Origin: Laetmonice hystrix
Lineage: Eukaryota
Assembly: GCA_965235115.1 (NCBI GenBank)
Contig: OZ249438.1
Location: forward strand, 22,258,001-22,322,000
Reading direction: 5' to 3'
Length of the DNA: 64,000 nucleotides
The notes beneath the pieces are model-generated. The model was not told where the DNA came from, searched no databases, and saw nothing but the letters and a program-made list of their open reading frames with translations. Positions 27,801 to 64,000 of this stretch are shown here, one piece after another. Position 1 is the stretch's first letter, and every line of letters starts with the position of its first letter. The translations under genes and the position numbers were made by a program.

Positions 27801-29717
27801 AATGGACACGCTTCAAACGCTGTAAGCGTCTCCTAGTTTTAAGCACCAAAGGTACGTTACATTGAATGATGCGCGATATGGCACAAATTCCCAAATAGTT
27901 GGGGGTAAAATCATCATCATCATCATCATTATACCCATCGTCGTCTTCCTCGCAACTACCACAACTTTCAATCATTACACATGACTGAGCCCATGTTAAC
28001 ATACAGTATCCTCGCCACTCTTGAATACAGACATGTCCCTATAATATCAATTTTATCCAAGCACATCTTGTATCCAAGGCAACACGGCACCGTTGTCCTG
28101 TCGTTGTAAAATGTGACATTTTGCGGACAGTTCAAGAGATGCATGTGTTCTCCTCCCATTTCGCCCACGGTCCCGTCAAAGAGTGGATGGTCCATCTGAT
28201 GTTTTTCCGAGCCGTGCAACAGCACTCCAAAGTTTCTGGACGGTCCATCCAATCCAAGACACCAGCACATGACACACATCCACTAAAAATACTACTAGGA
28301 TGAGTAAATATATAATATATATAATATATATTAATAAAGAAAACCTTCCAACATGGTTTGCACCTGTATGCCCTGTCCTATCACTTTGCCATCTGTCCTC
28401 CACACCTCGCGAATCGACTGCCCCTCGGGTGGGTGGGTTTGTCATCCTGACCGCGGCCTCAACGGCCCCCAGTCCGTCCGCACGTACGTATAGACGTAAT
28501 CAAATAACAATGCATGCAGTTAAAATAGGAACTGCCACAAAACTGGTGTTTAACACGAACAAACACAGGCACACTGCACTGCTGACAAGACTCACTTCTG
28601 AATTGTAGCTTCACTGACCTATCTGTTGGGACTTTGTTGTCAACCTGATCTGATCTGGCAACATGACCTGAAGGACACAGCGACATAATTTTCGTCCTCC
28701 TTATGATGTGCCCTTTTTTCAAAAGGAGGGTGGTATTTAGACCCGAGTCTTCCACTGAAAATATACATGTAGATACATCAATATCTATGTATACATATAT
28801 GCTTTAAAAGCCAAACCATTGTGAAGTGCCTTTAGACACTGAAGTGCGACACTCGTTCGTTGTGATGATGTGTTCGTTCCTTTGAGACCAAATGAAAGCA
28901 GTCGGCTCCCTTCTCCATGGGTGAAGTGTTACTCCAAACGTCGGCACGGCCTAACCTTGTGCTTTGATTCACTGCAAACCTTGAAACCCTGGTACCCTCT
29001 GTTTTTTTCGATGTATTTCTTATCGCCTTGATTATCTCGATTATCACATTCAGTTAAGAATAAACATATTGCTTGAGACACCTTGTACTTGATAACAGCC
29101 ATTCGTGGCGACTCAAAAGTCAAGATAACTGTGTACTTGACACTCAATCAAGTATGGCTTCTCCACATACTGAGCAGCTTCCGGAGACCAAGTACGTCCT
29201 ACTGTAGAAATATTTGAGTATTTGTTGGGTTTTTGTGTGTGTCATGCAGACCACTATCAAAGAATTACATCCGGCCTGAAGGTATGCCACGTCTCTTCCC
29301 GTATAAGAACGTTACAAATATATATAATAATGTATGACAATGTGGGAGCATCCTAATATTGTGCCAATCCCAAATTTTTCCGAGTGTTGCAATCTGCATA
29401 AATGCGTTCATTTTTAGAATAGCGCCTAATATACATTTATAAGTAGGTTATCAAGGGACTGCCATCGATAGTGGGGCTTTTTGATATTGTGATATTTTTA
29501 AAATCAATCATCATGCATACAAAGATACTGATCAATAATATAAACAGACCTGTATAAGATATACAGGGTTTTCAGACAAAACTGATATTACCGATAATTT
29601 TCTTTACCGAATATTCAATACATAACTTGACAGTGGAGACAAAACAACGGTCAAATTGTGACACCAGATAGTCAACACAATAACAATATTCGATGAGATG
29701 AATCACGTGCTCTAAAA
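24880..29717 (-). other. Probable long 3' UTR / downstream region of BCL11 (end not defined)
   Basis: AT-rich, no credible ORF, directly follows the stop codon. Long 3' UTRs are typical of vertebrate BCL11 genes. The left boundary is a guess, based on a minus-strand ATTAAA near 24895-24901. Confidence 0.3.
25728..25779 (+). promoter_or_regulatory. Cluster of AGGTCA nuclear-receptor-type half-sites
   Basis: AGGTCA at 25728, 25745, 25757, 25768 and 25774 plus CGGTCA at 25739; includes TCAAGGTCA and a DR0 arrangement. Function is not shown. Confidence 0.35.
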
Positions 29718-32011
29718 TCAATCGATGTGGTCCATTTTTGAGAGGGCTGGTGAGGCTGAGGAGCCGAGACTGTTTGTCCCTGGGGTGCTGCTTGCACTGA
29801 CTGAGCCAGCATTCTGGTTCTCCACGCACTTTCGCATGTGCTTTTCTAGAGTGCTTGGCACAGAGAATGGCATGTTGCAGAATTTGCAGCGGTAGACATC
29901 TTTACCCATCCGTCCATGTGTCTTCATGTGACGAGTGAGCTTCGAAGACTGTGCACAGGCGTACGAGCATAACTCACATCGATATGGCTTCTCCCCTGTA
30001 TGTGAACGACGATGCACTGTCAGGTTCGAGCAGTTCTTGAACACCTTTCCACAGAATTCGCAAGTGTCATTACGGCGCTGTTCTTTGCTGGGACGCACGC
30101 CAACCAACGAGGAAGGATTCGACACTGTGGGCGAGGAGGCCAAGGACGGCGCGAGCCCAAGCGCACTTAGACTCGTGCTCGGTTTAGGACTATGTACCAG
30201 AGAATCCACTGTATAGGCACTTTCATGATGGTGGCCGTTTTCATGAGAGTGCGGCACTGGTAGCATTTGATCTGGTGACCCCATCCCGCTGTGTGGCACC
30301 ATGGCGTTCATGGCTCCGATAAATAAGTCTCGATGTGAGCTTGTCGGCGGGAACCAGATGCGGGGGAAGAACGGTTCCATGTGGTTGGGTACTAGGTTCT
30401 GTTCCTGAGGCTCCAACTTGATACGCTTGCTGTCCGGTCCGGACTCTAGGTCCGGCAATGATCCGTGGATCTTACCACTGTTCTCCATACCAATGGAATC
30501 ACCTTCACTGTGACCATTCTCCGTGATCGTCTCACTGTGCTCTGGCTTCGGCTGGATGCCCTGGCGCCGCTTGCTTTCTTCTAAAGCCTGTCGGAAGGCT
30601 TCACTATACGCCTGGATTGAATTGAGTCCAGTGTTCTCCATGACTTCACTGAGTAAAGTGGCACCAGCGGGTTTCTCTCCCACAGAAAGATCGGTAGGCG
30701 TTTCGTTGCTATCGTCCTCGAAGGAAAACTCCAACTTCTTGGGGTTGGGATGGGGAGCGGAGAGGTCAGTGGGCTCGTCTTGGATGGCGCCCATCTTCCT
30801 GGCCTCCTCCATGGCACGCTCCTCATCCTCACTCTCGCTGTCCTCGGATTCACCCTCACCCTTCGACAGCTTGGAGTCAGGCGTGCTGCTCGACGACCTC
30901 ATCGAGTTCTCAGAGCCCGTGGACATTGAAGACGCTTGTGAGAGGGAGGAGGACATGCCATGGTGGCGCGACGAATGTGTCTTCATGTGCCTCTTGAGCT
31001 TCGAGGCCTGAGTGCAGGCGTGTGGGCACATGGGGCACTTGAACGGCTTCTCTCCCGTGTGAGAGCGCCGGTGCACAATGAGGTTACTCTGGAACCGGAA
31101 GCACTTGCCACAGAATTCACAAGCCTTGGCCTTTCCTGGTGTGACCGCCCCCGACGATGACTTCGGACTGCTGTCGCCGGCGGGAGTTGGTGAGGTGGCT
31201 GTCGGGGACTTAGAGAAAGGTGTTAGCTGGCCGGGGTATTGGGCCGAGTGTTTGGGACTGGGCGAGTGCGGTGACGGGCTGTTGGTTCCTGCTAACTGTC
31301 GCAGGCGCTGTGAGTAAAAGTCCAGTGCCGACCCTTCCAGGGGGACGGCCGGGGACAGTGGGTGACGGTGGTGGCGTTCGAAGGGGTTTGGGAACCCCGG
31401 TATCGCTGATGGCGGCGGCTCGAAGTTTGGGGGCATGCCAGGAAAACGCTGGAACGGGTCGGGTATGAGGTCAAGTCTGAAGTCGCAGTGAGGGGGTCGG
31501 CTGAAGGGGCCGTGGTTGACGAGAACCGGGGAGATTGGGGGACGCTCCCCTCCCGAACCCGGCATTCGGAACATAAAAGGCGGGTGAGGCTGAGACAGCA
31601 TGTCCATACCCATACTGATGGCTGGCGGTGAGCTGGCCGGGCGGGGTTGTTGGGGTAAACTCTTGGAATGAAGCGAGGTCGGGGACTGCTGCGGACCGAC
31701 GGGCCGCTCCTCCTTGGGTTTGGGCGTGGGTGAACTCTCCGAGTTCTCTCGCTTCGGCTTCGTCTTCGCTTTGTCCTCTTTCGAAGGACTGGGACTTGGG
31801 TTGGCGACGGGCGTGCGCTGCCCCCCTGAGTTTTCACAGGACTTTTCCCTGTCGTGGTGGTGATGGTGGTGGTGTCGTTCATGGTTCCGATCACGCTGTC
31901 GGAGCAAGTCCTCGTAGATTTTCAACCCGTGCTTTCCCTGCGCGTGCTGCAGCAGTGCCCATGCCGACGTGAAGCCATCTTTGCACGACCCGCACGTGAA
32001 CTGGCTTGGTT
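29718..32011 (-). CDS. BCL11: BCL11A/BCL11B (CTIP) family C2H2 zinc-finger transcription factor, terminal coding exon (764 codons plus TGA)
   Basis: ZF1 EPSQFTCGSCKDGFTSAWALLQHAQGKHGLKIY (31929-32000). ZF2-3 CEFCGKCFRFQSNLIVHRRSHTGEKPFKC..HACTQASKLKRHMKTH (30975-31121). ZF4-6 CEFCGKVFKNCSNLTVHRRSHTGEKPYRCELCSYACAQSSKLTRHMKTHGRMGKDVYRCKFCNMPFSVPSTLEKHMRKC (29826-30062). All are near-identical to human BCL11A as recalled. Conserved linker motifs: PFMFRMPG, LDFYSQRLRQLAG, SIQAYSEAFRQAL, KRIKLE. The ORF-track start MFCCVFT is intronic; the exon starts after TTTACAG in phase 1. Confidence 0.97.
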
Positions 32012-32045
32012 CTGTAAACACACAACAAAACACCGTATGTTAGTC
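32012..32045 (-). promoter_or_regulatory. 3' splice site and branch point of the BCL11 terminal exon
   Basis: Minus strand reads GACTAAC (32045-32039)-atacggtgttttgttgtgtgtttACAG/AACCAAGC: a consensus branch point about 28 nt upstream of a CAG acceptor. Confidence 0.85.
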
Positions 32046-34278: not shown

Positions 34279-36495
34279 GTTTGGTGGGAGGTAGGAGGGG
34301 TGGTGGTGTGACCATCAGAGTTGGGTTAGGTGTCGGGGGTGGGGATCTAGACGTTTGGTGGGAGGTAGGAGGGGTGGAGGTGTGACCATCAGAGTTGGGT
34401 TGGGTGTCGGGGGTGGGGATCTAGACGTTTGGTGGGAGGTAGGAGGGGTGGTGGTGTGACCATCAGAGTTGGGTTGGGTGTCGGGGTGGGGATCTAGACG
34501 TTTGGTGGGAGGTAGGAGGGGTGGAGGTGTGACCATCAGAGTTGGGTTGGGTGTCGGGAGTGGGGATCTAGACGTTTGGTGGGAGGTAGGAGGGGTGGAG
34601 GTGTGACCATCAGAGTTGGGTTGGGTGTCGGGGGTGGGGATCTAGACGTTTGGTGGGAGGTAGGAGCGGTGGTGGTGTGACCATCAGAGTTGGGTTAGGT
34701 GTCGGGGGTGGGGATCTAGACGTTTGGTGGGAGGTAGGAGGGGTGGAGGTGTGACCATCAGAGTTGGGTTGGGTGTCGGGGGTGGGGATCTAGACGTTTG
34801 GTGGGAGGTAGGAGGGGTGGTGGTGTGACCATCAGAGTTGGGTTGGGTGTCGGGGGTGGGGATCTAGACGTTTGGTGGGAGGTAGGAGGGGTGGTGGTGT
34901 GACCATCAGAGTTGGGTTAGGTGTCGGGGGTGGGGATCTAGACGTTTGGTGGGAGGTAGGAGAGGTTTGGTGTGACCATCAGAGTTGGGTTAGGTGTCGG
35001 GGGTGGGGATCTAGACGTTTGGTGGGAGGTAGGAGGGGTGGTGGTGTGACCATCAGAGTTGGGTTGGGTGTCGGGGGTGGGGATCTAGACGTTTGGTGGG
35101 AGGTAGGAGGGGTGGTGGTGTGACCATCAGAGTTGGGTTGGGTGTCGGGGGTGGGGATCTAGACGTTTGGTGGGAGGTAGGAGGGGTGGTGGTGTGACCA
35201 TCAGAGTTGGGTTGGGTGTCGGGGGTGTGGATCTAGACGTTTGGTGGGAGGTAGGAGGGGTGGTGGTGTGACCATCAGAGTTGGGTTGGGTGTCGGGGGT
35301 GGGGATCTAGACGTTTGGTGGGAGGTAGGAGGGATGGTGGTGTGACCATCAGAGTTGGGTTGGGTGTCGGGGTGGGGATCTAGACGTTTGGTGGGAGGTA
35401 GGAGGGGTGGTGGTGTGACCATCAGAGTTGGGTTGGGTGTCGGGGGTGGGGATCTAGACGTTTGGTGGGAGGTAGGAGGGGTGGTGGTGTGACCATCAGA
35501 GTTGGGTTGGGTGTCGGGGGTGGGGATCTAGACGTTTGGTGGGAGGTAGGAGGGGGGTTGGTGTGACCATCAGAGTTGGGTTGGGTGTCGGGGGTGGGGA
35601 TCTAGACGTTTGGTGGGAGGTAGGACGGGGGTTGGTGTGACCATCAGAGTTGGGTTGGGTGTCGGGGGTGGGGATCTAGACGTTTGGTGGGAGGTAGGAG
35701 GGGTGGTGGTGTGACCATCAGAGTTGGGTTGGGTGTCGGGGTGGGGATCTAGACGTTTGGTGGGAGGTAGGAGGGGTGGTGGTGTGACCATCAGAGTTGG
35801 GTTGGGTGTCGGGGTGGGGATCTAGACGTTTGGTGGGAGGTAGGAGAGGTTTGGTGTGACCATCAGAGTTGGGTTGGGTGTCGGGGTGGGGATCTAGACG
35901 TTTGGTGGGAGGTAGGAGGGGTGGAGGTGTGACCATCAGAGTTGAGTTGGGTGTCGGGGGTGGGGATCTAGACGTTTGGTGGGAGGTAGGAGGGGTGGTG
36001 GTGTGACCATCAGAGTTGGGTTGGGTGTCGGGGGTGGGGATCTAGACGTTTAGTGGGAGGTAGGAGGGGTGGTGGTGTGACCATCAGAGTTGGGTTGGGT
36101 GTCGGGGGTGGGGATCTAGACGTTTAGTGGGAGGTAGGAGGGGTGGTGGTGTGACCATCAGAGTTGGGTTAGGTGTCGGGGGTGGGGATCTAGACGTTTG
36201 GTGGGAGGTAGGAGGGGTGGTGGTGTGACCATCAGAGTTGGGTTGGGTGTCGGGGTGGGGATCTAGACGTTTGGTGGGAGGTAGGAGGGGTGGTGGTGTG
36301 ACCATCAGAGTTGGGATGGGTGTCGGGGGTGGGGATCTAGACGTTTGGTGGGAGGTAGGAGGGGTGGTGGTGTGACCATCAGAGTTGGGTTGGGTGTCGG
36401 GGGTGGGGATCTAGACGTTTGGTGGGAGGTAGGAGGGGTGGTGGTGTGACCATCAGAGTTGGGATGGGTGTCGGGGGTGGGGATCTAGACGTTTG
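34279..36495. repeat. G-rich minisatellite, 74-bp unit (some 73-bp), about 30 copies
   Basis: Unit GTTTGGTGGGAGGTAGGAGGGGTGGTGGTGTGACCATCAGAGTTGGGTTGGGTGTCGGGGGTGGGGATCTAGAC; very homogeneous. Confidence 0.98.
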
Positions 36496-36737
36496 AGCCA
36501 CGTTGGCCGTCTTTACTCGCACTCAACGCCTTGTGTCACCTGGACGTTAGATGTGTCAACACCCACTGTCTGCCGGCTGCGGTTATACACACCACTCATT
36601 TTTACTGTCTATCTTTTCCAGCTTTCCACTTATTCCGACCCCTCCCGCTTTCTGTCCACCCTGCCACCATACACGAGACACTTCATCCGGACCTCACTTA
36701 ACCTGACAAGGACCTCCAAACTATCAGTCCGACGGGT

Positions 36738-37260
36738 CCTAACGACGACAGCCAGTTTAACGACGACATATAGTCTGCAATGTCTTAACGACGACCCCCT
36801 CCATGGTATCCTAACGACGGCAGTGACTCTCTGAGATCCTAACGACGAGAGTGAGTTTAACGACGACCCATAGTCTGCAATGTCTTAACGACGATCCACT
36901 CTATGGTATCCTAACGACGACAGTGACTCTCTGAGATCCTAACGACGACAGTGACTCTCTGAGATCCTAACGACGACAGTGACTCTCTGAGATCCTAACG
37001 ACGACAGCGACTCTCTGAGATCCTAACGACGACGGGGACTCTCTGAGATCCTAACGACGAGAGTGAGTTTAACGACGACCCATAGTCTGCAATGTCTTAA
37101 CGACGACCCACTCTCTGAGATCCTAACGACGACAGCGAGTTTAACGACGACCCATAGTCTGCGATGTCTTAACGACGACCCACTCTCTGAGATCCTAACG
37201 ACGACCCACAGCCCGGGGTATTATAACGACACCCCACAATCTGAGGGTAATAACGACAAC
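36738..37260. repeat. Composite / higher-order minisatellite built on a TAACGAC(GAC) core
   Basis: About 21 TAACGAC cores spaced by recurring 18-, 26- and 28-bp monomers. Confidence 0.92.
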
Positions 37261-39960
37261 CTGGTGTGTGTTACGTTAGGTTACGTGAACTGGTTCGTCG
37301 GGGTCTGGCCAGCCGCCGCTGTCCAAATATGGCGCGGGGTCGTTGGGGGGGGGGGTGCATGGGGTTGGGGGCGACCAGGCCGGCCTGGCGTGGCATCCTT
37401 TAGCTGGTAGGGGGTCATCTCACAGTCCACGTAGCCACGGCCAGCATGTCATCGCTCCTCTCCCCCTTTTTTTCTTTTTTTTTCACCGCCCTTCCGAAAC
37501 CTTCTCTCGTTAGTTCCTGGGGACCCTCTGTGATGTGGAGTAATTTATTACATGGGAGGGTGGCGGTTGGCTCGAGCGTTCTTGCACTGCTGGAAAAGTA
37601 TGTAGCTTGGCTCTTGGTAGAAACCCCTCCTCCAATACCCCCACCTCAGTCTACTGCTGGTCAGCATCTTCAACTGGTTCTCAAGGAACAAATGCGAGTC
37701 GGTTTGGGCGGCGCTGGCCCTACAACAAGCACCCAACCTGATGTTATGCAACTGGCATGACCTGACGGCCCCCGGTGCCAGGCTTGTAGTCAGACTGTGT
37801 GTTTTCTATCAGCACCTCTCCCCGCCAGCTGAGAGCCCACGCCCCGCTGTAGGCGGCCGTGCTGCGGACTGGCCAGTTTTTTTCTTCCTCACCCCCTATC
37901 CAGCTGTACCCTCAGATGCCTGGGGGGCAGGTCCTTCGCCCCTGGTAGGTGCCCACTGGGGCAGGCCTTGCCAATTTGGTCCTGGAGAACCTTGCATCAC
38001 TGGCTCTCCTGCTGAAACCCGCCCCCTGGGGCAGCAGTGGGGGTGGGGGGATACAGGCGTGAACCACACCTGAACCTCTCACAGCCACCAACTAACATAT
38101 TGCCAATATTAAATCAGTGCTCACTACCGGCAGGAAACCCCCACCCTTCATACCCAATCCATATCGACCACTTATCTATGACCCTTCCTCAGATTTCCTC
38201 GTTTTGACATGTGCTTTTTTTAGGGACAGGTTCCTCCCCCAGCCCCCCCCCCCCCCAAGCATGTATGCCTGCTGGTACTTTCTGTGCCTAGAAAATTGAA
38301 CCTGTGTATAGACCATCAAAGTGGATGGGGCACCTCCGTAAACGATTGGGCATCTTGGTGCACTTGTACTTTTTAAGTGCGAACTCTCACAAGTTTTGAT
38401 GCTTACTTAAGAATGCTTTGATGTTTACCAAGAATACTTGTTTCTAATGACTTGCCCACTCTGCACTGAGAAATCACCATCTACAATGTCGAACTGCCCT
38501 TTGCTCTTTTAGTCGCCACGACCTATGTTGGTCATGGTCATATGTTGGGAGTTAGGTCCAGGGTCGACAACATCGAGAGATCGCCAAGCTGAGATTTATC
38601 TGTCCACCGTACATCACCATCGTACTCACATCACCCAGCGCATTACTCGAGGAAAGAATTCCTAAATAACTGACAACAGTTGAGACCCTGATTGGAGCGG
38701 TCTTAAGGTGGTGGTGGTCGGATCGGCTGGGAAGCCTTGGATCAGGTACAAAAAGTACAAATTCCTTGGGACGTGCAATTGTCTGCAAACAGTGACGGTC
38801 TTCAATAATAATAAGAACGTCACAAGGTCCGTGTTTTAATGCAGTTAACGTATTTTCTCCTCCTCAGTTTCTATATTTAAACGGTGCGTTTGATGTGATC
38901 TCAATAATCCTGATTATCATGGTTTCTCTCCACAGGTCACTTGTCCCTTTATTCCTCATCCCCTGCCCCCTCCACAACTCCACTCACTGCCTTTTAAAGC
39001 CGACCCAACGATATAAGTAAAAAAAGGCCTCAGCTGTGTTATACGTACATGGTTTAGTGGTATCCCCTTACAGAAGGTGAAGGGGTCAACTTGTGACTAG
39101 AACACCGACACTCCCCATTCTCCGAACCTGACTCAACCAACCTTCACAGGGCTAGTTTGGCAAGGTCCTTGGTCATAGTCCATTGCAGAAGCAGAATGAC
39201 CCTTGTCTTCTCTCCCCACAACCTGTCGGACTCGAGGTGAAGGGAGGGGGATTACCTGTACGGTTCGGGATCGACGGCCGCTTCAGATGCGGTTTGGTAG
39301 TTTTGACAGTTTTGCCCGTTTTCAACCCGTTTTGCCAGCCGGACGTTAGTGGACAGTAGGGGGTGGGGCAGGTTTGGCTGTAAGTAGGTCAGGTCGGGCG
39401 GGCTTCCTGCTCGGAGCGATGGGGATCAGGGGCCGCCTGGCGATCCAGAGGTGGCGGGCGGTGGGGGGGGGGGGGGGGTGGAAATGGTCCGCCGGGCGTT
39501 GGGACGGGGAGGGGGCCGGTAGGCTGGTTTGGATTTGGTTGGCTATGCAGGCTGGCGGGGCAGAAAGCTCACCCCAGTGAGGGCAAATGGCACAGGGGTT
39601 CTCCTGTGTGTTCCTGCTGCTATCAACGGTGTCTAGGCATGCTGCCAGCTTTCTGTAACCTCACACGGTGGAGCGCTGCTGCTACCACGCAGGGAAAGAA
39701 GGGGGAGAGAGGGGCAAAAAAAACTACTCTCGGGGCTGGACGTGATGGCATTTGTCCGAGGAGGACTGGGTTGGGCCAGACTTGGTTAGCCAGGGCAGGC
39801 AGACCGACGGCTGAACCCGGTGGGTGGGGTGGGTCCCATCCGTCCAACATGACGGCCAGGGGGGGGGGGCAACCTTCATCCTTTTTTTCAGAAAGCCGAG
39901 GGCAACTTTTTCCCAGTTGTTATTTTCGACATTTAGTTTTAGCCTGAACAGAAAACACGT

Positions 39961-40190
39961 AGGTATATACCCGGGTTGTGGTACCCCTGTGAACAAGTTT
40001 GTCGTAATACCGGGTTGTGGTAGCACTGTGACCAGGTATGTAGTATACCCGGGTTGTGGTACCACTGTGGCCAGGTATGTAGCATACCCGGGTTGTGGTA
40101 CCACTGTGACCAGGTATGTAGTATACCCGGGTTGTGGTACCACTGTGACCAGGTATGTAGTATACCCGGGTTGTGGTACCACTGAAACCA
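39961..40190. repeat. Minisatellite, 39-bp unit, about 6 copies
   Basis: Unit GTATACCCGGGTTGTGGTACCACTGTGACCAGGTATGTA; outer copies diverged. Confidence 0.95.
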
Positions 40191-43100
40191 GTTGTGAGAC
40201 CAATGTCCCAAGTGTCCCTGCCATCCCCGGGTGTTAGTCACTGGGTGAGTGGACACACCCTCTCAGGTCGATCTGTCCACCTGTATATACTTGTATATGT
40301 ACAGGCGAGTATTACCCCCACCCCCACCCCGTGCACCCACTAGCCACACTGACTCATTTCTCAGGAGATGATCACTATGACAGACAGTTCACAAAAAGTG
40401 CCCTCCGGGTGCTTGACTTGGCTGGCCACGCTGCCCACACTCGCTCTGGGCAACTCGCAAAGTTAAAAAAAAACTTGTTTGCCCCCAATCTGTCTCTCTC
40501 ACCACAACCAATCCGGCTTGGCTTTGGTAGACCACAACCACAGAATGTATACCTTAGGAGATTTTTTTTCTTTTGATGCATGGCAAAACCAGAAGGGAAA
40601 GCTGCAGAAAAAACTTTCCTTTCCTTAAACTTGGACCTATCCTTATACGCTGAACTTCTGACTTGACTGGCCTGTTTACTGCTGACCTGAACTGGGTCGC
40701 CATTTCAACATCTCTGCTTGCATTTGAAAAAAAACCCGCTGGAGTCGGTTTCTGGTGGGGTAGGGTAAGGTTGGCTGGGTTTTAGCCGACTCTTTCACCA
40801 ATCAGTGGAGGGCATCCCTTCTCTACTCGGGAGTAGACCCCCGTCTCTCCCTTCCTCCCCTCGACCGGCCACAAACCACAAGGTCCAGACCCTTTTCTTT
40901 GCTCCCTCTCTATCTCTGTGTCTGTTGTGGCTCCAGCCCCCCCCCCCCCCCCCGACAATGCCTGTATACCCGGTTTGACTGGCCACCAATGCGCACTGAA
41001 GCCACTGCGTATAATGTTGAACCATATGGTGTGCGTTTCCAAGCCACCACTAAATGGGACGGTTGTGTGTGTTTGCACCACCTTGGGCGGTCAGTCAGCA
41101 GTCAGACAGGACGAACTGGCAGGGTGTATAATAATACCATCCAGGTAGATTGAAACAGGCAATTCTCCCATTGGTCATGGCTCCATCTCTTTGAGTCTCT
41201 TTAAAGAAATGTTTACCTAAAGCTTTTTTGTCCCTTTCATTTCTGAATGCTACCTGCATATAAGTCGTCTGGTTATCAATGGTGGACACAGATGTCCAGA
41301 GTGGCCGCCATTAATGATCGCTTTAGCCAGTGGCCTGACATGAGATGGTTCCTACCCATATGTATGGGTTCATTGTCCCCACATTATGAAACACGGCGTC
41401 CCTTTGTGAACGGCCATTCTTCGCCCCATGTCATACGTTTGGTATGGTTATCACAGATTACTTCTATGCCAGGAATAAAACTCATCTCATTGCGTCCACT
41501 CTGCCAAACGCTAAGACCATGCTACTCATGACGATCAAGTATCTAAGTATCTAAGTATCGCAGTCTCTCCCTCTCAAACAAAGCGTGCCCAGGTATAGAG
41601 ATAGACATTGTAGGCTGTGGATCGCCAACCTGAGCTCTGCCCAGTCCTCTCATTGACTGGTGTTACCTCGCCTGACCAGGCACAGAACCCCAATGTTTTA
41701 TGAACTGGGCCACAGCAGTCTTTCCTTGCTCTCGGCCATATTTTCACTCACTGTGCCACATCAATGCAGTCACTTGTACATCCTATCATTTCGGAGAAAT
41801 TGGAGCCATCACGTCCTCGGCTCGATCCACTGATGGACGCTACACGGCTTCAAAAGTCAGGAAGTCTTGCACAATGCATTAATTTTGCAGCTTATCAGAA
41901 AAGATGACAGTGTAGGGGGCAGCCACTGTCCTTTGTTTATCCCCTGCTGGGTTGGCCAGTTGCTATTTTCCTACCTTTGAAGTGTTACAAAGTGAGCAGA
42001 TCTACTTCGGAAACAACACTTTTTTGTTTCTGCCAGGAGAAATTAATGATTGGAGTGTGTGAATATGGCCTAGAGTGACTTCAAACCGCGCACCAATACA
42101 CACATGTCCAGTGATTCAAAGAGGTGGGTGTCGGGTTGGCTGGGGTGTACATCTTGGCTTTGCATGCTCACATGTTATTATGGTAATAGTCTCCATTAGC
42201 AGCAATTATCAATTACCAGAATTAATGTCATTTACTTCAATTGCTTTCACTTTGAATGCTGATGCTAACTGTTCGGTCCCTCGGTGGTCAATGCAGGCGT
42301 ATAACGGTTCGAACTCTTGGCACCATAATAGACTGTCCATTAGAATTAGCACATGAGTTGTAATGTCGACTCCAACCCTCACCGCCACCCCATATTACAA
42401 CCCATAGCACCAGTCTGTAGATTACGTTCTGGCTGGGTGCATAGCGTCCATCGACCCTCGTTATAATGATGCCATGTACCGATAGCCGCCCATCACCTTC
42501 CAACAATTTCAGTCCATACACACATAATTTCATTGATTCAAACTCAATCCAAAGCTGCCGAATTTAAACGCTTATCAAAAGAAGTGAGAGAAATTTGGTG
42601 CGACTCTATTCAAAATGGTGATAATCGGGGGGAGAATTTTGGATAGGTTCATGTCATGTGTGATGGGCAGACGAATCTATCCCAAACTAGTTTTATATTA
42701 AACGCTCACTTTGGTAAATGACTTCATAATAGCAGCCAAGAACAGCAGCCAACTGGCGTGAGAAATGACGAATGAGTAACTCTACATTGAAATCAATTAA
42801 GAAAGTACCAAGCATTCATAATTGGATAACTCATTAATTAGTGGGAAAACCTATTACCAGATATATGAAGTGAAAAGTGTAAATTAACTGTCAAGGAGTG
42901 AAAGGTATTTGAAATTCTCTTTTTTACTTCGATTCAGATCTGCATTCCTGAACATACTTGCTGCCTAATGGGGCTCGGTTCATAACTCTCCATTTACAAT
43001 ACAGCACCCAATAACCGACATTAATATGGTCTTTTGAAGGCTCCTGGACATTTTATAAAGTCATCTATTTTGACTGCAGCCAGCCGGCTGATCTGAAATC

Positions 43101-46100
43101 TACTGCTGGAAATACTGCCGATGGCTTCCACCGTACCCTGGTAATTTGGCCATGATATATGTCATTTTTATAAAGGGAACATGGGAAAAATGTACGCAAT
43201 AAATTCCCGAGTTGATTTTCTAGTGTTCATTAATTCAAGAACGAAGATATTAGGTCCTTCGCCACAGAGGGGAAGGACACGAAGAACAAAAGAAGTCATT
43301 CCAACAAAACACATACCTTCCATATTTTGTCCCTATGTATGCATTTTTAAACCAGTTTCCTCGGAAACCCGATGTTCATATATATAACATAAACTATTCC
43401 TTAACTGCTCAGATGCAGCGCTTTAATCAAAAGGCATGAAAGATAGATATGACAAGGATGCTATCTTAGGCCGGCAAACTGGCTCTGGATTGAACTAGAA
43501 AGGGCAGTATAATTTGTGCGATTAGGGAATTTTGAATGTTTGCAGGGCTAACCTGATGCATACCACGGTCATCAAAGATTTCGCAGCATTATGGCAGCAG
43601 CAAAGCCCCTCTGGCTGTCACTAAAATCTGGATCAGCTTTCTAGTGGGTCAAGTCCCACGTCCAGGCACTTGAAAGAAACCGAGGTGAGGTGCATTCTGT
43701 CAGACCGATTGAAAACAATGATATTTATAGGTGCAGCAGACTGGAGTCTGGCCGCCGTGAGAATCCACCTTGTCTCATCAATTTGCTGACCACTGGAAAC
43801 GGTAGCGTGTTGCAAGCGTTCGTCGAGGGTCAGTTCTCCAGGTGATAATGTTCCCACTGTGAGCTCCTACAGCTGACGAGCTGCAGAGAACAGGCAGGCG
43901 CAGGGATATAGTGGTAACGATTTCTGACGACTTTGTCTGTAGTATGTGAAATATGAAACTCAAAACACCTTTATCGTTACAATAATTGCCGAGCTCCCAG
44001 CAAATTCTCAACCTTGCAAAAGAAACCAGAAAACGGTCTGAAACGTTAGGCACGATGCTTTCTTCATTCAGGTCATCTTTTGTCATTGCTTTGCGCGCGA
44101 GATACTAGGTCTAAAACCAACGATTTTTGCTAACGAAAATTACAGAACATTTTATCCCTGGCTGACTTACATCATGTTACTCCACTCCGAGAAAAAAAAC
44201 CAGGGAGCTTTGCCGGAAGCAACAGCAATTGCATGCCAATGAAGCTATCAAAAACCAATATTCGGTCCTTTACTTCATAAACCGCGCCGACTAATGCAGT
44301 ATAGTTAATCATAAGGACTTCGATATTTTCTGACTTCCCGTCTGTATTTCAGCTGGCTGAAATCTCAGCGTGGTGTGCCTCTCAGTCCGAGGCCAATCAA
44401 GGTCAGCTGAAATGACAAGGCCATTCATCGCGCACGGCTACCAGCCTCACTCAATCATGCATACATTAAAAATATGGAAGCCTGGTTTTAAAAGCTCGCC
44501 GTATTATTTTTCCAGTTGATTAGCAGCGCTGTGGACGGCGTGGCTCATGCTTGCCGCTTGCTTAATGGCGAGCACCTGTACTGGCCTCACCTAATTAGAA
44601 GCTAAAAGACAGTTCGCCTTATTAGAAGCGAACAGTATCCATTAAAATTCCCACTGCATTTCATCCCTCTACATATTTATGTTTGACATCACGGCCGCCC
44701 CGCGTGGGTTCTTTCATTTTTTATCCACTGGCTTTTAAAATCCTTACAGGGTCAGTACTGTAACGGGTTGGGTTCTGGATCACTTTTATATAGATGAGTT
44801 TGATGTCTGTGTGCTCCCTCCCCTCCCCCCAACCACCATCCCCACCATCAACCCTCTTGGAAATCCATCAAAGTGCAGTACATCCCAACACATGCCCCTA
44901 GTCCCAGGCCCTTTGCATATTTTTCAATTATCAATGGATTTGAAAATTAACATAGGTTGCCAATTTCCCACCTTTCATGTTGTTTTAGAATGAAGCAATT
45001 CTTACTAGCTTTCACCTTTTTGACCGACAATTATTACCACGCAATCCATCAAAATATCTTGCCTGAATATTGAGACCTTCCCAACAAAAAAATCAAAGGT
45101 CATTGAAATAACACACAGAGCTATCTTCTACTGCAGTCTGATTCTTCTCAACACCAGAGAATATCTTCCTCTCCCCATCCTCTGCCTGATTTACAAACCA
45201 GTCCTCACACTGCAGTTCTTCCACACAGGCCATTCGACATTTTTCACTGGGTTTAAAATTAAAAAGGGTCAGCTTGGTGTTGGTGCATATTAATTGTGGT
45301 AGAAGTTGCGCACAGCTATGATGGCCGTTCTCATTAGTTGGCTTGCCTGGATGAACCTACCACCTCGGTTAGCAGCCAAAACAACTTTTTATGGCCGGCC
45401 ACCATTCGCCAATCCTGCGTCCATCTCTCCTTGCCGAAGCCAATTCACAAGCCATTTGTTGCCACATACAATAGCCCTCCCTCTCTGCCTTTCTTTACAA
45501 CCATGCCTACTTTTCAATGTCTTTCAATATTTCACCGGCTAAAAAATCTACCCGCTGTCAATGTTCCCCTGATGCATATTTAAATCTGGCTCTAATCTGA
45601 CGCCTCCCTGGACAGGACAGTGTCATTAATTCTCAAACAGATTATCTTCCATCCACCACCTCATTTCAATGTCCCTTCAAATTTTTTTCATCAGGCTTTA
45701 ATTTATTCAAACTGGTCACTAGTCCGCGGAAGGATGCATATTTAAGCTCGCGTTTCCCATGGTGCTTTGCTGGCCAGAGCTGTCAACGCTAATTCCTCCC
45801 AGAGAGCGGTCTCTACTCTCCCATCATGCAACGGAAGAAAAAAGGTGACAATCCCTTTCAATACATCCTTTTAAAATTTATTCTGGTCAATAATTTACAC
45901 AAACACCTTGAAATGCATTTCAATTTTCCGACGCTGCCAGCCGATTACAAGCAGTTCTAATACCAATACTTCCTGCATTCTCTTCGTCTGCTTTGAGCAT
46001 CTTTTCATGTCTGTGATGAAGGCTTTTTAAAATTCATACCCATTAAAGTTTCATGGCTGCTGGTCGTGAAATCCCCTCTACCCATCCTCCCCATTATCAT

Positions 46101-47056
46101 TAATTCTTATTTCCTTGGGCATCCACTCTCCCTGTGAAGCTAATTCAACACTGTCCCCAATCCCTACTTTTTTCCTCCCTTCGTTTTAATTTAATTTTAA
46201 TTTATTTATGTCCGCCCACATTTCCCACATTAAGAGCAAGTTAAATCCCAAAGCTTTACGTCACATCTCCCTCTAGAGATACCTATACATAAGACATCTC
46301 AGGCGCAAAATCTCCTCAATTTCATTAAATATCTTTTCAAATTTAAGCCAGTCAGGCTTCAAATGAACATCTCGATTTTTTATGTCTTTTAAAATCCTGA
46401 TCATTAATTTGAGCCTGGTTTTGAAGGCTCAATTATTAGACAGGGCCTGGCTAGTCGGTCAGCGCCGCATGGCTTCGCCGCTGCTGCTGGCAGCTGCCCA
46501 CCATCCTTTGTCTCTACTTTTTTTTCACTAAAAAAAATGAAACTGTTGGTCAATATTTCATGCACAGATGTGTATTTGAGAAGCAGTGATGTGGAAAGTA
46601 GGGCAAAGGAGTACAAGTATTATGCCGCCGTCCTGTGTGTATTGTTTGTATGTGAATGTGTGTGCGGGGTGTGTGCGTCTGTGAGCTGCATACCATTCAC
46701 ATGTTTTGTTACCTAATGTTACGTCGGCCATGCTGTGCGTTGCGTGGCTACCGTTCTAAAGACCGCGGCCAGCGAGGACGGGGAGGGAGGGGGGAGGGCA
46801 GCATCCCTCTCTCCCTACTCTCCCCCTCCCCAGCCTCTTCCCTTCTGAAACACCCCTCCCCCCTCCATCCCAACCGACCGACCAACCAACGCCCACGCCA
46901 ATTACGCAACCTAATGCAATAAGTGCTAGGCTGGTGTATCGGGGCTGGGGGCTGAGGCTGACCTCCAGGCGAGCTACCATTCTCCCGGGCTTGCGCGTCA
47001 CATCTGGATAGCCACGCCTTGCATGGCGACCGCCTCGCCACTGGCCATTGTCAAAG

Positions 47057-55868: not shown

Positions 55869-58569
55869 GAGATGTGAGAGGATTCGCCCGCCCAAATTAC
55901 CATGGCTATTGGCAGGGAGGGGTACAGAGAGGGTGGGGTGGGGGTGAGATGGGGTGGGGTGTATACACGCACTGAAACACAGCTCAATCTTCATGTACTC
56001 ACCCTGATTCGTAGTTGATCTGAAGACCTGGGAAATGCTACCCTTAAGGTGTTCAAGACATTGCCGGGTTATCCCTGAGTGGTCACTCCGGGCCCGCGGG
56101 TACTTGGGGGGGAAGGATCCATCAAGTAGAGGGGTTGGAAAGGGGGTGATCCGATTGAGAGGTGCAGGGGGGCTGTGAGGGGCTGACCCCTACGGGATCG
56201 ATATTAAAGGGATGTTGGTTTTCTTGTAACTGCCCCGACTGGCCTTTTGCAGACATGTCACAGATGTCGAGCACTGATTCAATGCTTGCCAAATAGCCAT
56301 CAATTAGAGTAGAAATCCGGAGTCTCATCTCTCCGGCTTACACGGTTCTCACCGACCACGCAATAACACGGCTTGCATGGTCGTACATGCATACATGCAG
56401 ACCGGCTGGGCAGGGGTGCGCTGGGGTGGAGGGGGTTGGGGTGGAGGGATTAGAGACTTGCTGGGAGAGGGTGGTCAAATCTACAGTTACATCACCCCTA
56501 TACCGCCCCCCTTCCCGCTCACCCCTCACACACATAACGGTCCCACTTTGAACCCCAGCTCTCTCCCACTTCTCAACGTCGCCGTGGCCATTAAACTGAC
56601 ATATATTTACTTGCGGGTGTGTGGAGAACGGCCCGGCTCCAAGGCCTGGCCAGCAGGGGGGTGGCTGGATCGATGTCAGGGTTTTTTTCTATGACAGGCG
56701 AGTGGGGCCTGGCCTTCAGAGTATGGTCAGTGATCCAGCCATGAGCTCTCATAAACTTTCCCGGGCGGAGGCGGGGGGCGGGGGACGCGGACACTGGATC
56801 AGTTACATGAAAAGTTATTTTGGGTTCTAACTATCCCATCCTCCTTGCGTCAGTTTTTTTAAATATATTTTTTCCTCCATATTTTTCACTCCATGATCCA
56901 TACCATGGGATGAAAACATGATCCCGCCGAATCCAAGACACATGGAACTTTAAATGATGATAGATCACCATCAAATTGTGTGAAGTGGTGGAATCATAGC
57001 CTGACCACCATAATAAATATGTTTAATAATACGATCAACTCTTGCCGTCTCCTACTCCACCATCCCACTATACTGCTGGTATCCTTCGACAGCCCTGCTC
57101 GCTCGTGTCCCTCGGAAACCTATATATCATCCGCAAATCAACTGGGTGAAATATTGGTTTTATGGCAGCCAATACCCAATGTCAATGACCAAGGTCGGGC
57201 ATCAGGGGAAGGAGGAAATTTATTTTTCATTTCCATCGTCCAATGTCCATGTCCAGGAATTGGCATTTGGTTTCAATTGTGGCACGAGACTTTTTGTTAT
57301 TGAAGATGTCTGGGCTAGGTAAGTGATAACATCTTGCAGGGCTTATTGGTTCGTGGCCAGCTGGCCCGCGCCCCTGTCTCTGTCCCTGACCCTTCGCCTG
57401 GCTAGGGGCACGGAAAAAATGGAGCAAACTGGTCAAAATCAACCCAACAAAATCTCCAGGCCATAACTGAACTGTCCGCCAATCTGTTTCTATCCAACAG
57501 ACACTTGAAGGAATGGGGCCGCCTGGTTGGCAGTGGCACGGGGGTAATCAACTTTCCCTGCCTTTTTTTATATTTCAGCCGCCTACAGAAGCCTGGTCTG
57601 TCGGCTGACCACTCTGGCTACACACTGGCGTATTTGTTTAAACCCCCAGGATGGAATCAGGAGTTGACCGTCCGTGTTGGAATGGTTGGTCCTGATTCTC
57701 TCCACCCCAATCCACACACTCTTGGCCAGCGTCCACTCCAGGGTCAGCAAGTATATACAGCAAGTGGCTGTCTGACCGTGATCCCAATTTATTTCAGGAT
57801 CCAGCCAGCCCGGAAGGACATGAGCAACCGTTGTGGAGGAACGTCCACGGTGGCAGCCTGCCTCCTGGGTTCAATCTCATCAGGTATGGACAACACTGAC
57901 CAGCGCTGACCAGTGCTGGCCTCAGGGAGCCGTCGGACAGTCAGGACCCTGGCCCGGGTTGGATATTGATCCATCAAAGCCACTCTAATCTGAGATAATT
58001 CCATCAAGTGTTTATCTCTACACGGAAGGCATCCAGAGAGAATACATATTAGGCCTTGATCTGAATGTCGGTAATCCATGCTGGTAATCTCTTCAAGAAA
58101 ACCGAATCCTGGCACCGTATGCTGTGCAATGCTCCTCTCTATGTGTAACTAATCAAAGTCAGTGGGACAATACAGATCCCATTCTGGTCATCCTTAAAAA
58201 TAATACGATTTAATAAAAAAAACATGCCTTTATGAAGGGAACCTTGCAGGGGGATGGTATTCCTCACCAGATACAAACACGCATGTCCGGCCAGGCCAGC
58301 GCTTTTAATGGTAGCCACGTCATCGATTTATACCGCTCGATGGTAAAACCAGTTTACTGTGACTACTTTCTATTGGTGGTAAACTCGGGCTTTAGAGCCG
58401 GCATGGAACCTCGAGGGACTTCATTTAACACACTACCCGTTTCTACTGCTGTTCATGGTCAAGTTCACCCAAGCAACTTAACAACGATACTGGGCCCGAG
58501 TGGCCACCAACTGATGGAATAAAAATACGATTTGACCACTAAAGTCATGTCGTTCGCGTCTCGGAGGTG

Positions 58570-58595
58570 GCCGAAATGCCATTTCGGCGTCTAGT
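58570..58595 (+). mobile_element. Helitron-like 3' terminus (hairpin plus CTAG/T)
   Basis: GCCGAAAT-gcc-ATTTCGGC hairpin followed by GT-CTAG-T; 5' end not identified. Confidence 0.35.
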
Positions 58596-60089
58596 CTCGC
58601 CATCCCCTGTTGGCATTGGATCTTAGTGGGCTAGTCCACTGCCAAAGCTCACTTAGCAGCCTTGATGGCAGCAAGAAAGCCTTGGAATCTAAGGATAAGC
58701 AGGCTTGAATCTGTCCAGTTGTCGGCGTTTTCCCCTTTGGCTCGGAGAGGGCCTTGCGGTCCAACAGGGAGCTTTGGTAGATGCAACTATTGTGTGTAGA
58801 ATTGAGGCCAATTGGACCCCGGTGACCGGCCTGTCCGGAGAACTGGCGACGACTCGAGTAGAATACAGATGAGCATTGACGCAAGATGCTGTCTGCCGGA
58901 GCGGATGTAGTGGTCACTGGTGGGCCAACTGACCACGGACGGCCATCAGGTTGACCGCCGGCCACGCTCCGCTGGGACCTGGCTGGCCAAACAACAAGAG
59001 CCATTGATTGATCCTGGAGGTGGCCCTTGGCTGTCTTCTCATGGTCCTCTGTGTCCAGTTGGTATGCCCCGTACCGTGCCACCATCGACCCCGACCGGCC
59101 CCCACTGACCGTCCCGCCGTCAGAGTTGGCAGACTGTAAGGGCTCGGTCTGTGGTCTAAAACCCTGCCATACAGCAGGTCCCAGCTGATGAGGCCGGCCT
59201 CACCGCCTCTCAGACAATGCCAGTGATCTTTAAAGGTCGTTTAATGGATCCGCCGAGAAATAAACCGCCCATCGCTTTGCTGTCTGAGTGCATGAAAAGG
59301 TTGTTGCGTGGGTGGGGTGGGGTTGATGGGGTCTGGGTGGGGGGGGGGGGTGAAGGCCCGGGTATGGGGAAGTTCAAGATGCTCGCATACTGTCCAAATG
59401 CCCGTCTGATGGACTCAAATGGACCTAGACCACATCGTTTGTGTGGTGCTCCTTTTAATCCAAGGCGGGCCACTGACCTTACACTTAATTCATTATGTCC
59501 AACACCTCCCTCTGAATACACCAACTCCACGCAAACATTCAATTGCCACAAAATGTAGTCCTTTCTCTGCTGCTTGGAGAGTGACCCATTAAAATATTAA
59601 GGACTCCTCAAGGCAAATGGTCGGAGAGTGGTTCGAACGAGACACTCTGCTGATCGGCTACTTACAGCTAACAAAGCCCTGGCCAGTGGCATTCAGCGTG
59701 CTTCTGGTCGCCTTACCAGAAAACTTCACATACATCTTACTGCCGAGAGAGGGGGCATGACAGAGAGTTGTAGCGAGGTGAAGGAAATCGGGCCATTCGA
59801 TTGGCTGTCATGGTCTGCAGGTCGAGCCCCATCATCAATCATGTCGGGATGTAGGGGGGTGCAGGGGCAGGGAGGGGGTGTAGGGGGTAAGGGGTAAGGG
59901 GCCGTCTTTTGGCTGGGACGTGATGATCTGCACGCCACAGTTTGGATTTTTTTATCACTCAGATTCTGTGATCTTTATGTATGGTCAAGTATCTGGTTTC
60001 TGGGCACGGCAACACTTTTTTTGTGCATGCGTGCTGAAGTCTGGGGAATGCAGGGAAATGCTGACCCAGGGAGTTCCTTCTCGATATTG

Positions 60090-62570: not shown

Positions 62571-64000
62571 CAGCGACTCCAAGTTTTACCATGTTATACC
62601 CTGACTGGACCGGAGGTGTAAGGTTCTCTAGGCGGTGTTTTTCCAGTGGACCTGCCATGTAAAGTTGGCGCATTCCGACTGCCGCTCGGGAGGCCCGTCT
62701 TGTCAGAGAGAACAATAACAAGTGATGCGACTGGTTGGGAAACAAGCTGCGGTTGATCGGGCCTGGGATCGCACTGTTTAGGCCATGTGTCAAGTGGTGA
62801 GCACAATGGACCTGGGTGTGTACATGCTCGGCCCCCTCGGCCTGGCCACTGCACCGCACGGCCCCACCGGTTGGAAGGACATTTTTTGCCCCTCGCCGCC
62901 CCATGTGAAGCCCTGGTCACCATTGCGGCAACAACCCGTGTATATACATCTCCGTAAATGATCATAAATTGTGTTTATGGTGGCAGAAATGAGTGTGCCA
63001 TGTGCAAATGTATTGTTATACAGTGCCGTATCAATTTTATAAATGGTGTCGGGGCGGCGCAATGATGTGGCCACCTCATATTACGGCAGGTCGATAAACA
63101 TCATGTGCCGGCCCGGCCCGACAGTGGCCAAGGAATGGCAGCCGTTGCATAAAACAATGGGTGATGAAACACAGGCCCTAAACCTTCTCCCCACCGCCTC
63201 TTCCCATAACCCCCCGCCGCAGTCCCGCACCCCCTCCTGACCCCCACCCTACCCCCGCCCTTTCTACCCTCACCTCCATGCCGCTCACCCTGTCCAGTGA
63301 TGCCCGAGTTACAGGGTCCTGACACCCACGACTCCCTGTGTCCACCATTGATCCCCCAGCCCTCATGCTGGATCGCCTTGCCATTTGCCGCATCGTTTAT
63401 TGACATGGAGTACATGATGATCCTTGAGAGACCACTTGGGGATGAGCTCTCCATCAATTGACCAGCCGGATCGTCCCCAGGATCCATACCCCTCCGATCT
63501 CACCCCCATCTTCGCTCCCACACCCTAAACACCCCAACTCGGCGGATGGTCTCCACCATGGATTATCTGGACAGCGATCCCACCACTTAACCAGTCAGAG
63601 GCACTGATGAGAAGTTATTGAGTAGGTTCCTCCTGGAAACCCCTTACTCTCTCATACCTCCTCACACGGTTGACAGATTGCGTCTCTGTTTCAGACTCAA
63701 GATGTAAAATAGACCCGGCATATTTATTCAGGCTGTCGAACGTCGAATTACCAGCACCTGGAGCGGAAATCGACAATCTGCCGCTAGGTGTCAGCACAGG
63801 TACAGATTAAAATACCAGTCAGGTGAAATTAGCGTGCTCAGACTGCTGCATTTGACCACAGTTGTTTTACTGTTTGTCCAAAAATACAACGTTTCCGTGG
63901 CAGTTAACTGGAATTCCTTTGTCTGCAATGGATGCGACACAATTACGTGTAACACACTGTCTTTTCAATACTTTTCCTGACGGCTTTAAGAAGCAGCACC

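What the first reader, a model, noticed from the sequence alone, without database searches (positions are those of the whole stretch)
34279..36495. About 30 tandem copies of the BCL11 binding hexamer TGACCA in BCL11's own intron: candidate satellite-based autoregulation
Seen: every 74-bp unit I inspected contains GTGTGACCATCAG; substitutions fall elsewhere in the unit. The array starts about 2.3 kb from the zinc-finger exon. Established: vertebrate BCL11A binds TGACCA through its C-terminal fingers and multimerises via ZF0, and the ZF4/ZF5 recognition helices here are identical. Inference: a homotypic site array acting as an autoregulatory silencer or protein sponge whose strength scales with VNTR copy number. 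Rough chance estimate: a given hexamer appears on either strand in about 3-4 percent of random 74-mers, so this is suggestive only. Motif invariance could simply reflect a young array.
Basis: partly seen in the sequence, partly recalled or inferred. Interest (0 to 1): 0.7.

Follow-up and report, generated by a model that had tools for sequence, protein, structure and literature searches.

The report
Young minisatellite carrying BCL11 sites
A real, recently expanded 74-bp tandem repeat inside the BCL11 gene of a marine-type invertebrate copies one BCL11 binding motif 30 times. This is most likely a hitch-hiking accident, and a separate non-repetitive cluster of the same motif, shared with a related species, is the better lead for BCL11 self-regulation.

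Summary
Positions 34279-36495 are 30 head-to-tail units of 72-74 bp, 97% alike, and each holds GTGTGACCATCAG. The array lies 2268 bp upstream of the splice acceptor of the large zinc-finger exon of a BCL11 homologue on the minus strand. The DNA-contacting residues of ZF4-5 are identical to human BCL11A.

The case for selection on the array is weak:
- Only 14 of 74 columns vary, so an untouched hexamer is expected 27% of the time.
- About 6-8% of 74-mers in this sequence carry the hexamer, not 3-4%.
- The window holds about ten minisatellites, so about 0.6 motif-bearing arrays are expected.
- In a related species the array is absent from the colinear place, right beside a conserved 55-bp block.

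The satellite is not genome-wide: read depth is fully accounted for by this one locus.

I read it as a young, G-rich, locus-specific minisatellite whose motif was copied passively (0.66).

The autoregulation idea gains support elsewhere. Positions 56-60 kb hold 15 non-repeat TGACCA sites against 3.2 expected, and the orthologous stretch of the relative holds 11 against 2.9. Drosophila BCL11 (Chronophage) is reported to bind its own locus and repress itself (PMC13324515).

The scan judged a similar minisatellite-with-motif case near Delta in this genome (s1-319931) the same way.

The parts
34279..36495 (+). Minisatellite: 30 units of 72-74 bp, G-rich on the + strand (52% G, 8% C). Each unit has one TGACCA on the + strand, which reads TGGTCA on the gene's sense strand. 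Spacing is 73-74 bp.
29718..32011 (-). Large last coding exon of a BCL11 homologue (ZF1, ZF2-3, ZF4-6; stop codon at 29718-29720).
32012..32043 (-). 3' splice site of the intron that holds the array: branch-point-like CTAAC, pyrimidine tract and AG.
   Evidence: read from the sequence
36509..36563 (.). Conserved non-coding block, 80% identical to the relative, 13 bp from the array's end. It marks the colinear position where the relative has no array.
36737..37245 (.). Second, unrelated compound tandem repeat (TAACGACGAC-containing units of 28/72/100 bp), 240 bp from the array. It has no TGNCCA.
39959..40191 (.). 39-bp x 6 minisatellite. Three of its six copies also carry TGACCA.
39524..39598 (.). 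Conserved non-coding block (80% to the relative), colinear with the others.
45587..46926 (.). Group of conserved non-coding blocks (463 bp at 77%, 43 bp at 100%) in the same intron. It looks like an enhancer, not an exon.
56001..60000 (.). Non-repetitive homotypic cluster of 15 TGACCA/TGGTCA sites (3.2 expected). It is colinear with a cluster of 11 sites in the relative.

Best explanation
The array is a young, locus-specific, G-rich minisatellite (VNTR). It arose by replication slippage and unequal exchange in the long intron just upstream of the last exon of BCL11, at a G-rich spot beside a conserved non-coding block. It arose after this lineage split from the sampled relative. The founder 74-mer happened to contain TGACCA, and amplification copied it 30 times. 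The motif's constancy reflects the small number of mutations since expansion, not selection. Shown here: the anatomy, the locus-specificity, the absence from the relative, and the chance levels. Inferred: the mode of origin, and that the array has no evolved function. Because this protein should recognise TGACCA, and BCL11 proteins favour clustered sites, the array may well be bound incidentally. That would be a side effect rather than its reason for existing.
For: There are 30 units at 97% identity. Variants are shared by non-adjacent units (for example units 10 and 22, 28 and 30, 18 and 19), which is the signature of block duplication. Only 14 of 74 columns vary, so a given hexamer is untouched with P=0.27 and the 13-mer with P=0.05. 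TGACCA/TGGTCA is in 7.7% of 74-mers of the window, and dinucleotide content alone predicts about 0.8 sites per kb. The window has about ten other minisatellites, so 0.65 motif-bearing arrays are expected. In two assemblies of a relative, the distance from the conserved block to the exon is 2319-2489 bp against 4484 bp here. The difference is about the array's 2217 bp, and no tandem repeat is present there. At that spot the relatives have only a short, variable G-rich tract. Unitig depth of the repeat is 0.3-1.3 times what this one array's k-mer copies predict. No terminal inverted repeats flank it. No Rfam family matches, and the sense transcript has no structure. An analogous 73-bp array with CSL sites near Delta in this genome was judged near chance (s1-319931).
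Against: Three of eleven minisatellites at BCL11 loci carry the hexamer where 0.65 are expected: this one, the 39-bp array at 39959, and a 66-bp array just 3' of the relative's exon (P about 0.03, post hoc). The same intron holds a conserved non-repeat TGACCA cluster, and BCL11 self-repression is reported in Drosophila (PMC13324515), so sites here are less likely to be inert. The 73-74 bp spacing is about 7 helical turns, which puts all sites on one face. A closer relative (85% protein identity) has a contig that ends 2142 bp upstream of its exon, which is where the array starts here. The array could therefore be older than the more distant relative suggests.
Confidence: 0.66

Rival explanations
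1. The array is a consequential homotypic BCL11 site array. Multimeric BCL11 binds the 30 phased high-affinity sites and feeds into a self-repression loop that already runs through TGACCA sites in this intron. Array length then tunes BCL11 output.
For: All base-contacting residues of ZF4-5, and the ZF2-3 helices, are conserved (PMC12006351). TGACCA is the best-bound variant, and bound regions carry 2-4 motifs per 200-300 bp, which is the density in the array (PMC12006351, PMC12978192). [quoted passage not shown] A TGACCA cluster in the same intron recurs in the relative. The satellite is unique to this locus.
Against: The array is absent from the relative at the colinear place. Motif invariance is uninformative, and chance is not small. 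There are no occupancy, accessibility or expression data. The ZF0 exon was not seen, so multimerisation in this species is unverified.
Confidence: 0.2
2. The array matters through its DNA structure rather than through BCL11. The G-rich template strand forms G-quadruplexes that slow RNA polymerase II or make a recombination and instability hot spot in the intron.
For: There are 23 non-overlapping G4 motifs on the + strand within 2.2 kb, against 22 in the other 61.8 kb. GC skew is 0.64. The + strand is the template for this minus-strand gene. A possible second allele at the left junction hints at instability.
Against: There are no experimental data. G-richness is a common property of neutral minisatellites. 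The sense RNA is C-rich, which does not favour R-loops.
Confidence: 0.1
3. The array is one copy of a dispersed satellite or the cargo of a transposable element.
For: A TIR element carrying a satellite was noted just outside the window (s1-347170), and the genome is repeat-rich.
Against: Repeat unitig depth is no higher than this single array explains. No other copy is in the window, and no flanking inverted repeats were found. The array sits between colinear conserved intron blocks.
Confidence: 0.04

Closest known systems
Classical G-rich hypervariable minisatellites / intronic VNTRs
   Same: Tandem units of tens of bp, a kilobase-scale array, strong G/C strand asymmetry, variant units interspersed by block duplication, a single locus, and lineage-specific origin.
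   Different: Length polymorphism is not demonstrated here (only a possible alternative junction in one run). The unit happens to hold the host gene's own binding motif.
Homotypic motif clusters that focus a zinc-finger factor on one gene (ZNF410 at CHD4; bioRxiv 10.1101/2020.08.31.274324, 10.1101/2024.02.24.581901)
   Same: Many copies of one short zinc-finger motif are packed in a few kb at a single locus, and cooperative occupancy is expected.
   Different: The ZNF410 clusters are evolutionarily conserved, non-satellite and experimentally bound. This array is absent in the relative and untested. The 56-60 kb cluster resembles them more closely.
BCL11/Chronophage self-repression in Drosophila (PMC13324515)
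   Same: A BCL11 homologue of a protostome whose own locus carries multiple candidate binding regions.
   Different: In Drosophila, binding was mapped by NanoDam and repression was shown by overexpression, and no motif or satellite was implicated. Here only sequence motifs are seen.
Minisatellite with CSL sites near Delta in this same genome (scan note s1-319931)
   Same: A 73-74 bp young array multiplies one pathway motif next to a gene of that pathway, with a separate non-repeat motif cluster further upstream as the stronger lead.
   Different: A different gene and motif. Here the non-repeat cluster could also be shown to recur in a related species.

Membership tests
Minisatellite / VNTR | Head-to-tail units of about 10-100 bp forming an array of 0.5 kb or more | tested here: met
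   30 units of 72-74 bp, 2217 bp in all
Minisatellite / VNTR | Single locus, not dispersed through the genome | tested here: met
   Repeat unitig depth relative to flank depth is 0.3-1.3 times the k-mer copies in this array. Caveat: contig depth is only a rough measure, and only one sample was available.
Minisatellite / VNTR | Copy number varies between alleles or individuals | tested here: inconclusive
   One run's contig leaves the left flank into a different, unit-like sequence. All runs are from one sample.
Conserved homotypic TF-site cluster (ZNF410/CHD4 type) | Several copies of the factor's high-affinity motif within a few hundred bp | tested here: met
   One TGACCA per 74 bp, 13.5 per kb against about 0.8 per kb expected
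Conserved homotypic TF-site cluster (ZNF410/CHD4 type) | The cluster is conserved in related species | tested here: not met
   No array and only 2-3 sites in the colinear 2.3-2.5 kb of the relative. By contrast, the 56-60 kb cluster does recur.
Conserved homotypic TF-site cluster (ZNF410/CHD4 type) | Occupancy by the factor in vivo | not testable with these tools
   No ChIP, CUT&RUN or RNA runs were found for this organism
Dispersed satellite / TE-borne tandem repeat | Terminal repeats or many genomic copies | tested here: not met
   No flanking inverted repeats, depth explained by one locus, and no other copy in the window
BCL11 (CTIP) zinc-finger gene | ZF1, ZF2-3 and ZF4-6 in order, with BCL11-type recognition helices | tested here: met
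   E=2.5e-48 to BCL11A ZF4-6 and E=2.9e-27 to BCL11B ZF2-3 structures. Named best hits are BCL11A-like proteins of nemerteans, molluscs and brachiopods.
BCL11 (CTIP) zinc-finger gene | N-terminal CCHC finger ZF0 (the multimerisation module) | tested here: inconclusive
   Not found in the window. Orthologues carry PF25491. The exon probably lies beyond position 64000.

The most novel reading that the evidence does not exclude
BCL11 self-repression, so far shown only in Drosophila, is an old protostome feature that works through homotypic TGACCA clusters in the gene's long last intron, as seen at 56-60 kb and in the relative. In this lineage a minisatellite has added 30 helically phased, best-affinity sites to that intron. 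That would create a natural copy-number-dependent dial on the feedback loop.
Probability: 0.12. Interest if true: 0.7.

Novelty: new member of a known kind. Interest (0 to 1): 0.33.

Why it matters
As a minisatellite it is ordinary. It also shows that motif-in-satellite coincidences next to the matching gene are common in this repeat-rich genome. The useful outcome is the side result. A non-repetitive TGACCA cluster in the BCL11 intron recurs in a related species. Together with the identical DNA-reading residues and the reported self-repression of Drosophila Chronophage, this gives a concrete, testable candidate element for conserved BCL11 autoregulation. If that loop exists, alleles of the array with different lengths would be a ready-made natural dosage series.

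Tried and rejected
- **N-terminal exons.** Regex and tblastn searches with ten orthologues' N-termini found only a weak 'SISAP'-like hit at about 63.7 kb (E=0.39). The intron's 5' end is therefore not fixed.
- **Transposon cargo.** No flanking inverted repeats were found.
- **Structured or known RNA.** Rfam gave no hit over the whole window. The sense-strand fold has z=0.04.
- **Progenitor of the unit in the relative.** Alignment scores were no better than shuffled units, and only a short G-rich tract sits at that spot.
- **Reads over the whole array.** I laid the left junction with fewer copies, as the tool advised.
- **Exact-match scan of metagenome contigs for the unit core.** Nothing was found.
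- **The closest relative.** P0001 (85% protein identity) had no DNA served. The scallop locus was too long to be served.
- **Lingula locus.** It has no significant 4-kb cluster (P=0.68). It has only a small promoter-proximal group of six sites (P=0.01 at one window size).
- **Sponge reading.** I rejected it on numbers: 30 sites against a background of roughly one site per kb.
- **Other factors for TGACCA(C).** I considered RUNX and GLI from memory. Few sites fit either.

Full report
**1. The observation.** Tandem Repeats Finder reports a single array at 34279-36495 with period 74, 30.1 copies and 97% matches. Cutting the array at the unit start gives 30 units of 72-74 bp, and every one contains GTGTGACCATCAG. 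A 23-mer around the motif matches 30 times in the window with at most one mismatch, and nowhere else. All 30 TGACCA lie on the + strand. The description and coordinates are correct.

**2. The gene.**
- The 771-codon ORF at 29718-32033 on the minus strand matches solved structures of human BCL11A ZF4-6 at E=2.5e-48 and of BCL11B/A ZF2-3 at about 1e-27. It carries five C2H2 fingers.
- In the printed alignment the ZF4 and ZF5 helices are identical to human. They include Asn753, Asn756, Gln781, Lys784 and Arg787, the residues that read the bases (PMC12006351). ZF6 differs at a few positions.
- The best named relatives are BCL11A-like proteins of nemerteans, cephalopods, brachiopods and bivalves at 40-47% identity, so the host is a lophotrochozoan-type invertebrate.
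- Orthologues align only from 'TEP..F.C' onward and have 140-180 further N-terminal residues.
- Upstream of that point the window shows CTAAC, a pyrimidine tract and AG, so the exon starts at 32011. The array therefore begins 2268 bp upstream of a 3' splice site.
- I could not find the upstream exons in the remaining 32 kb. 'Intron' is thus a well-founded inference, not a demonstration.

**3. Is it more than chance?** Four points lower the significance.
- Only 14 of 74 columns vary, mostly at columns 19-26 and in G runs. Variants are shared between units, so few mutational events are involved. A given 6-column window is untouched with probability 0.27, and the 13-mer with 0.05. Other invariant runs of 13 and 14 columns exist.
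- Outside the array the hexamer on either strand ranks 22nd of 2080 hexamers in the window, and 7.7% of all 74-mers contain it. Dinucleotide-preserving shuffles predict 42.7 sites against 54 seen in the bulk of the window, about 0.8 per kb, or about 6% of 74-mers.
- The window contains about ten other minisatellites. Summed over their unit lengths, 0.65 arrays with the motif are expected.
- The same scan met an analogous array (CSL sites near Delta) in this genome and judged it close to chance.

On the other side, three of eleven arrays at BCL11 loci carry the hexamer (P about 0.03). They are this one, three of the six copies of the 39-bp array at 39959-40191, and a 66-bp array 3' of the relative's exon. 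The count is post hoc, and six other hexamers do as well.

**4. Is the satellite genome-wide?**
- Three public runs of one sample hold the stretch.
The left junction with about ten copies was accepted.
- Unique flank contigs have depths of 60.5, 36.5 and 45.7. Repeat unitigs have depths up to 326, 393 and 526.
- Relative to flank depth, the repeat unitigs reach 0.1-1.3 times the number of times their 31-mers occur in this single array (0.3-1.3 for all but one short unitig).
- The tool warns that contig depth is no copy number. Still, hundreds of extra copies elsewhere would show, so the satellite is locus-specific.
- There are no flanking inverted repeats, and nothing similar turned up in metagenome contigs.
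- In one run the flank contig continues into a different unit-like sequence that is not in the window. This may be a second allele and remains unexplained.

**5. Relatives.**
- A protein 67% identical (P0002/P0005) led to Logan contig L001 and to a 3.4-Mb ENA contig. I walked that contig in three steps (L003, L005, L006).
- Conserved non-coding blocks are colinear along the whole intron. They lie at window 36509-36563, 39524-39598, 45587-46926 (463 bp at 77% and 43 bp at 100%), 57218-57358, 57981-58051, 59727-59805 and 63012-63101.
- The first block lies 13 bp from the array's end.
- The distance from that block to the exon is 2319 bp (L001) or 2489 bp (L003). Here it is 4484 bp. The excess matches the 2217-bp array.
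- The relative has no tandem repeat there and only two or three scattered sites.
- At the exact spot the two relative assemblies carry a short G-rich tract that differs between them. It is a plausible seed, but its likeness to the unit does not exceed shuffled controls.
- The array is therefore lineage-specific relative to this fairly distant relative, whose exon DNA is 69% identical.
- The closer relative (P0001, 85%) could not be read. Its contig ends 2142 bp upstream of the exon, which may mean a repeat lies there too.

**6. What else is in the intron.**
- Counting the hexamer along the window showed 15 sites at 56001-60000.
- Against the rest of the window it is the second most enriched of 2080 hexamers there (15 against 4.0). 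Random placement gives such a 4-kb maximum with P=0.005-0.006. No dinucleotide shuffle of the region reaches 15 (mean 3.2).
- The region has no repeats and no ORFs.
- The colinear stretch of the relative (L006 14000-18300, fixed by three flanking conserved blocks) has 11 sites against 3.8 expected from the rest of its locus (P=0.002). Shuffles give 2.9, and 0 of 300 reach 11.
- Only one site is positionally conserved (59982 = L006 18089), and several others are one-base near-misses. This looks like site turnover within a maintained cluster.
- In an unbiased scan of the relative alone the cluster is not significant (P=0.14). The support rests on the test being pre-specified by orthology.
- Lingula shows no such 4-kb cluster. 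It has six sites in 672 bp at the annotated gene start.

**7. Known biology.**
- BCL11A ZF4-6 binds TGNCCA with TGACCA best (29 nM). ZF2-3 binds the same motif weakly.
- Bound regions hold a median of four degenerate motifs, and ZF0 forms tetramers (PMC12006351, PMC12978192).
- No paper that I found reports vertebrate BCL11A acting on its own gene through TGACCA.
- ZNF410 at CHD4 is the textbook case of a zinc-finger factor focused on one gene by conserved homotypic clusters.

**8. Verdict.**
- The array is best read as a young, G-rich, single-locus minisatellite whose founder unit contained TGACCA by chance (0.66).
- It would probably be bound in vitro. Its density of one best-type site per 74 bp, about seven helical turns, suits a multimeric factor.
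- A real effect on a BCL11 feedback loop cannot be excluded (0.20). A structural G-quadruplex effect is a further minor option (0.10). A dispersed or transposon origin is essentially excluded (0.04).
- The global 'sponge' version is implausible on numbers.
- The stronger and more novel lead is the conserved non-repeat TGACCA cluster at 56-60 kb.

Noticed in passing
window 56001-60000; L006 14000-18300: A non-repetitive cluster of 15 TGACCA/TGGTCA sites (3.2 expected from shuffles), 7 of them reading TGACCAC. It is colinear with 11 sites (2.9 expected) in a related species, and only one site is positionally conserved. It is a candidate conserved BCL11 autoregulatory element.
   Followed up: yes
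window 45587-46926: A group of conserved non-coding blocks in the BCL11 intron (463 bp at 77% and 43 bp at 100% identity to the relative). They are AT-rich with TAAT-type cores, show no ORF and no Rfam hit, and are probably a developmental enhancer.
   Followed up: partly
window 28976-29086: A conserved block (82-86%) about 650 bp downstream of the BCL11 stop codon in both relative assemblies. It is likely a 3'UTR regulatory element.
   Followed up: no
L003 12962-13210: A 66-bp x 3.8 minisatellite just 3' of the relative's BCL11 exon also carries TGGTCA in each unit.
   Followed up: partly
window 34275 (run X2): The contig over the left flank runs on into 51 letters that start like a variant half-unit and then diverge. 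These letters are absent from the window. This may be a second allele of the array or a graph artefact.
   Followed up: partly
window about 63730-63760, minus strand: A short ORF piece with an 'RLSISAPGAG' motif resembles the conserved R.SISAPIA motif of BCL11 orthologues. It is flanked by an AG and a GT, and may be a small upstream exon (E=0.39 only).
   Followed up: partly
L007 9388-10059 (Lingula anatina BCL11A-like locus): Six TGACCA sites lie within 672 bp ending at the annotated start codon, and three of them sit in a roughly 43-bp triple repeat.
   Followed up: partly
window 36737-37245: A compound tandem repeat built on TAACGACGAC-containing 28/72/100-bp units lies 240 bp from the main array. 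The window also holds about eight further minisatellites (16545, 17302, 49198, 53765, 55003, 60410, 61917), which shows how repeat-rich this genome is.
   Followed up: no
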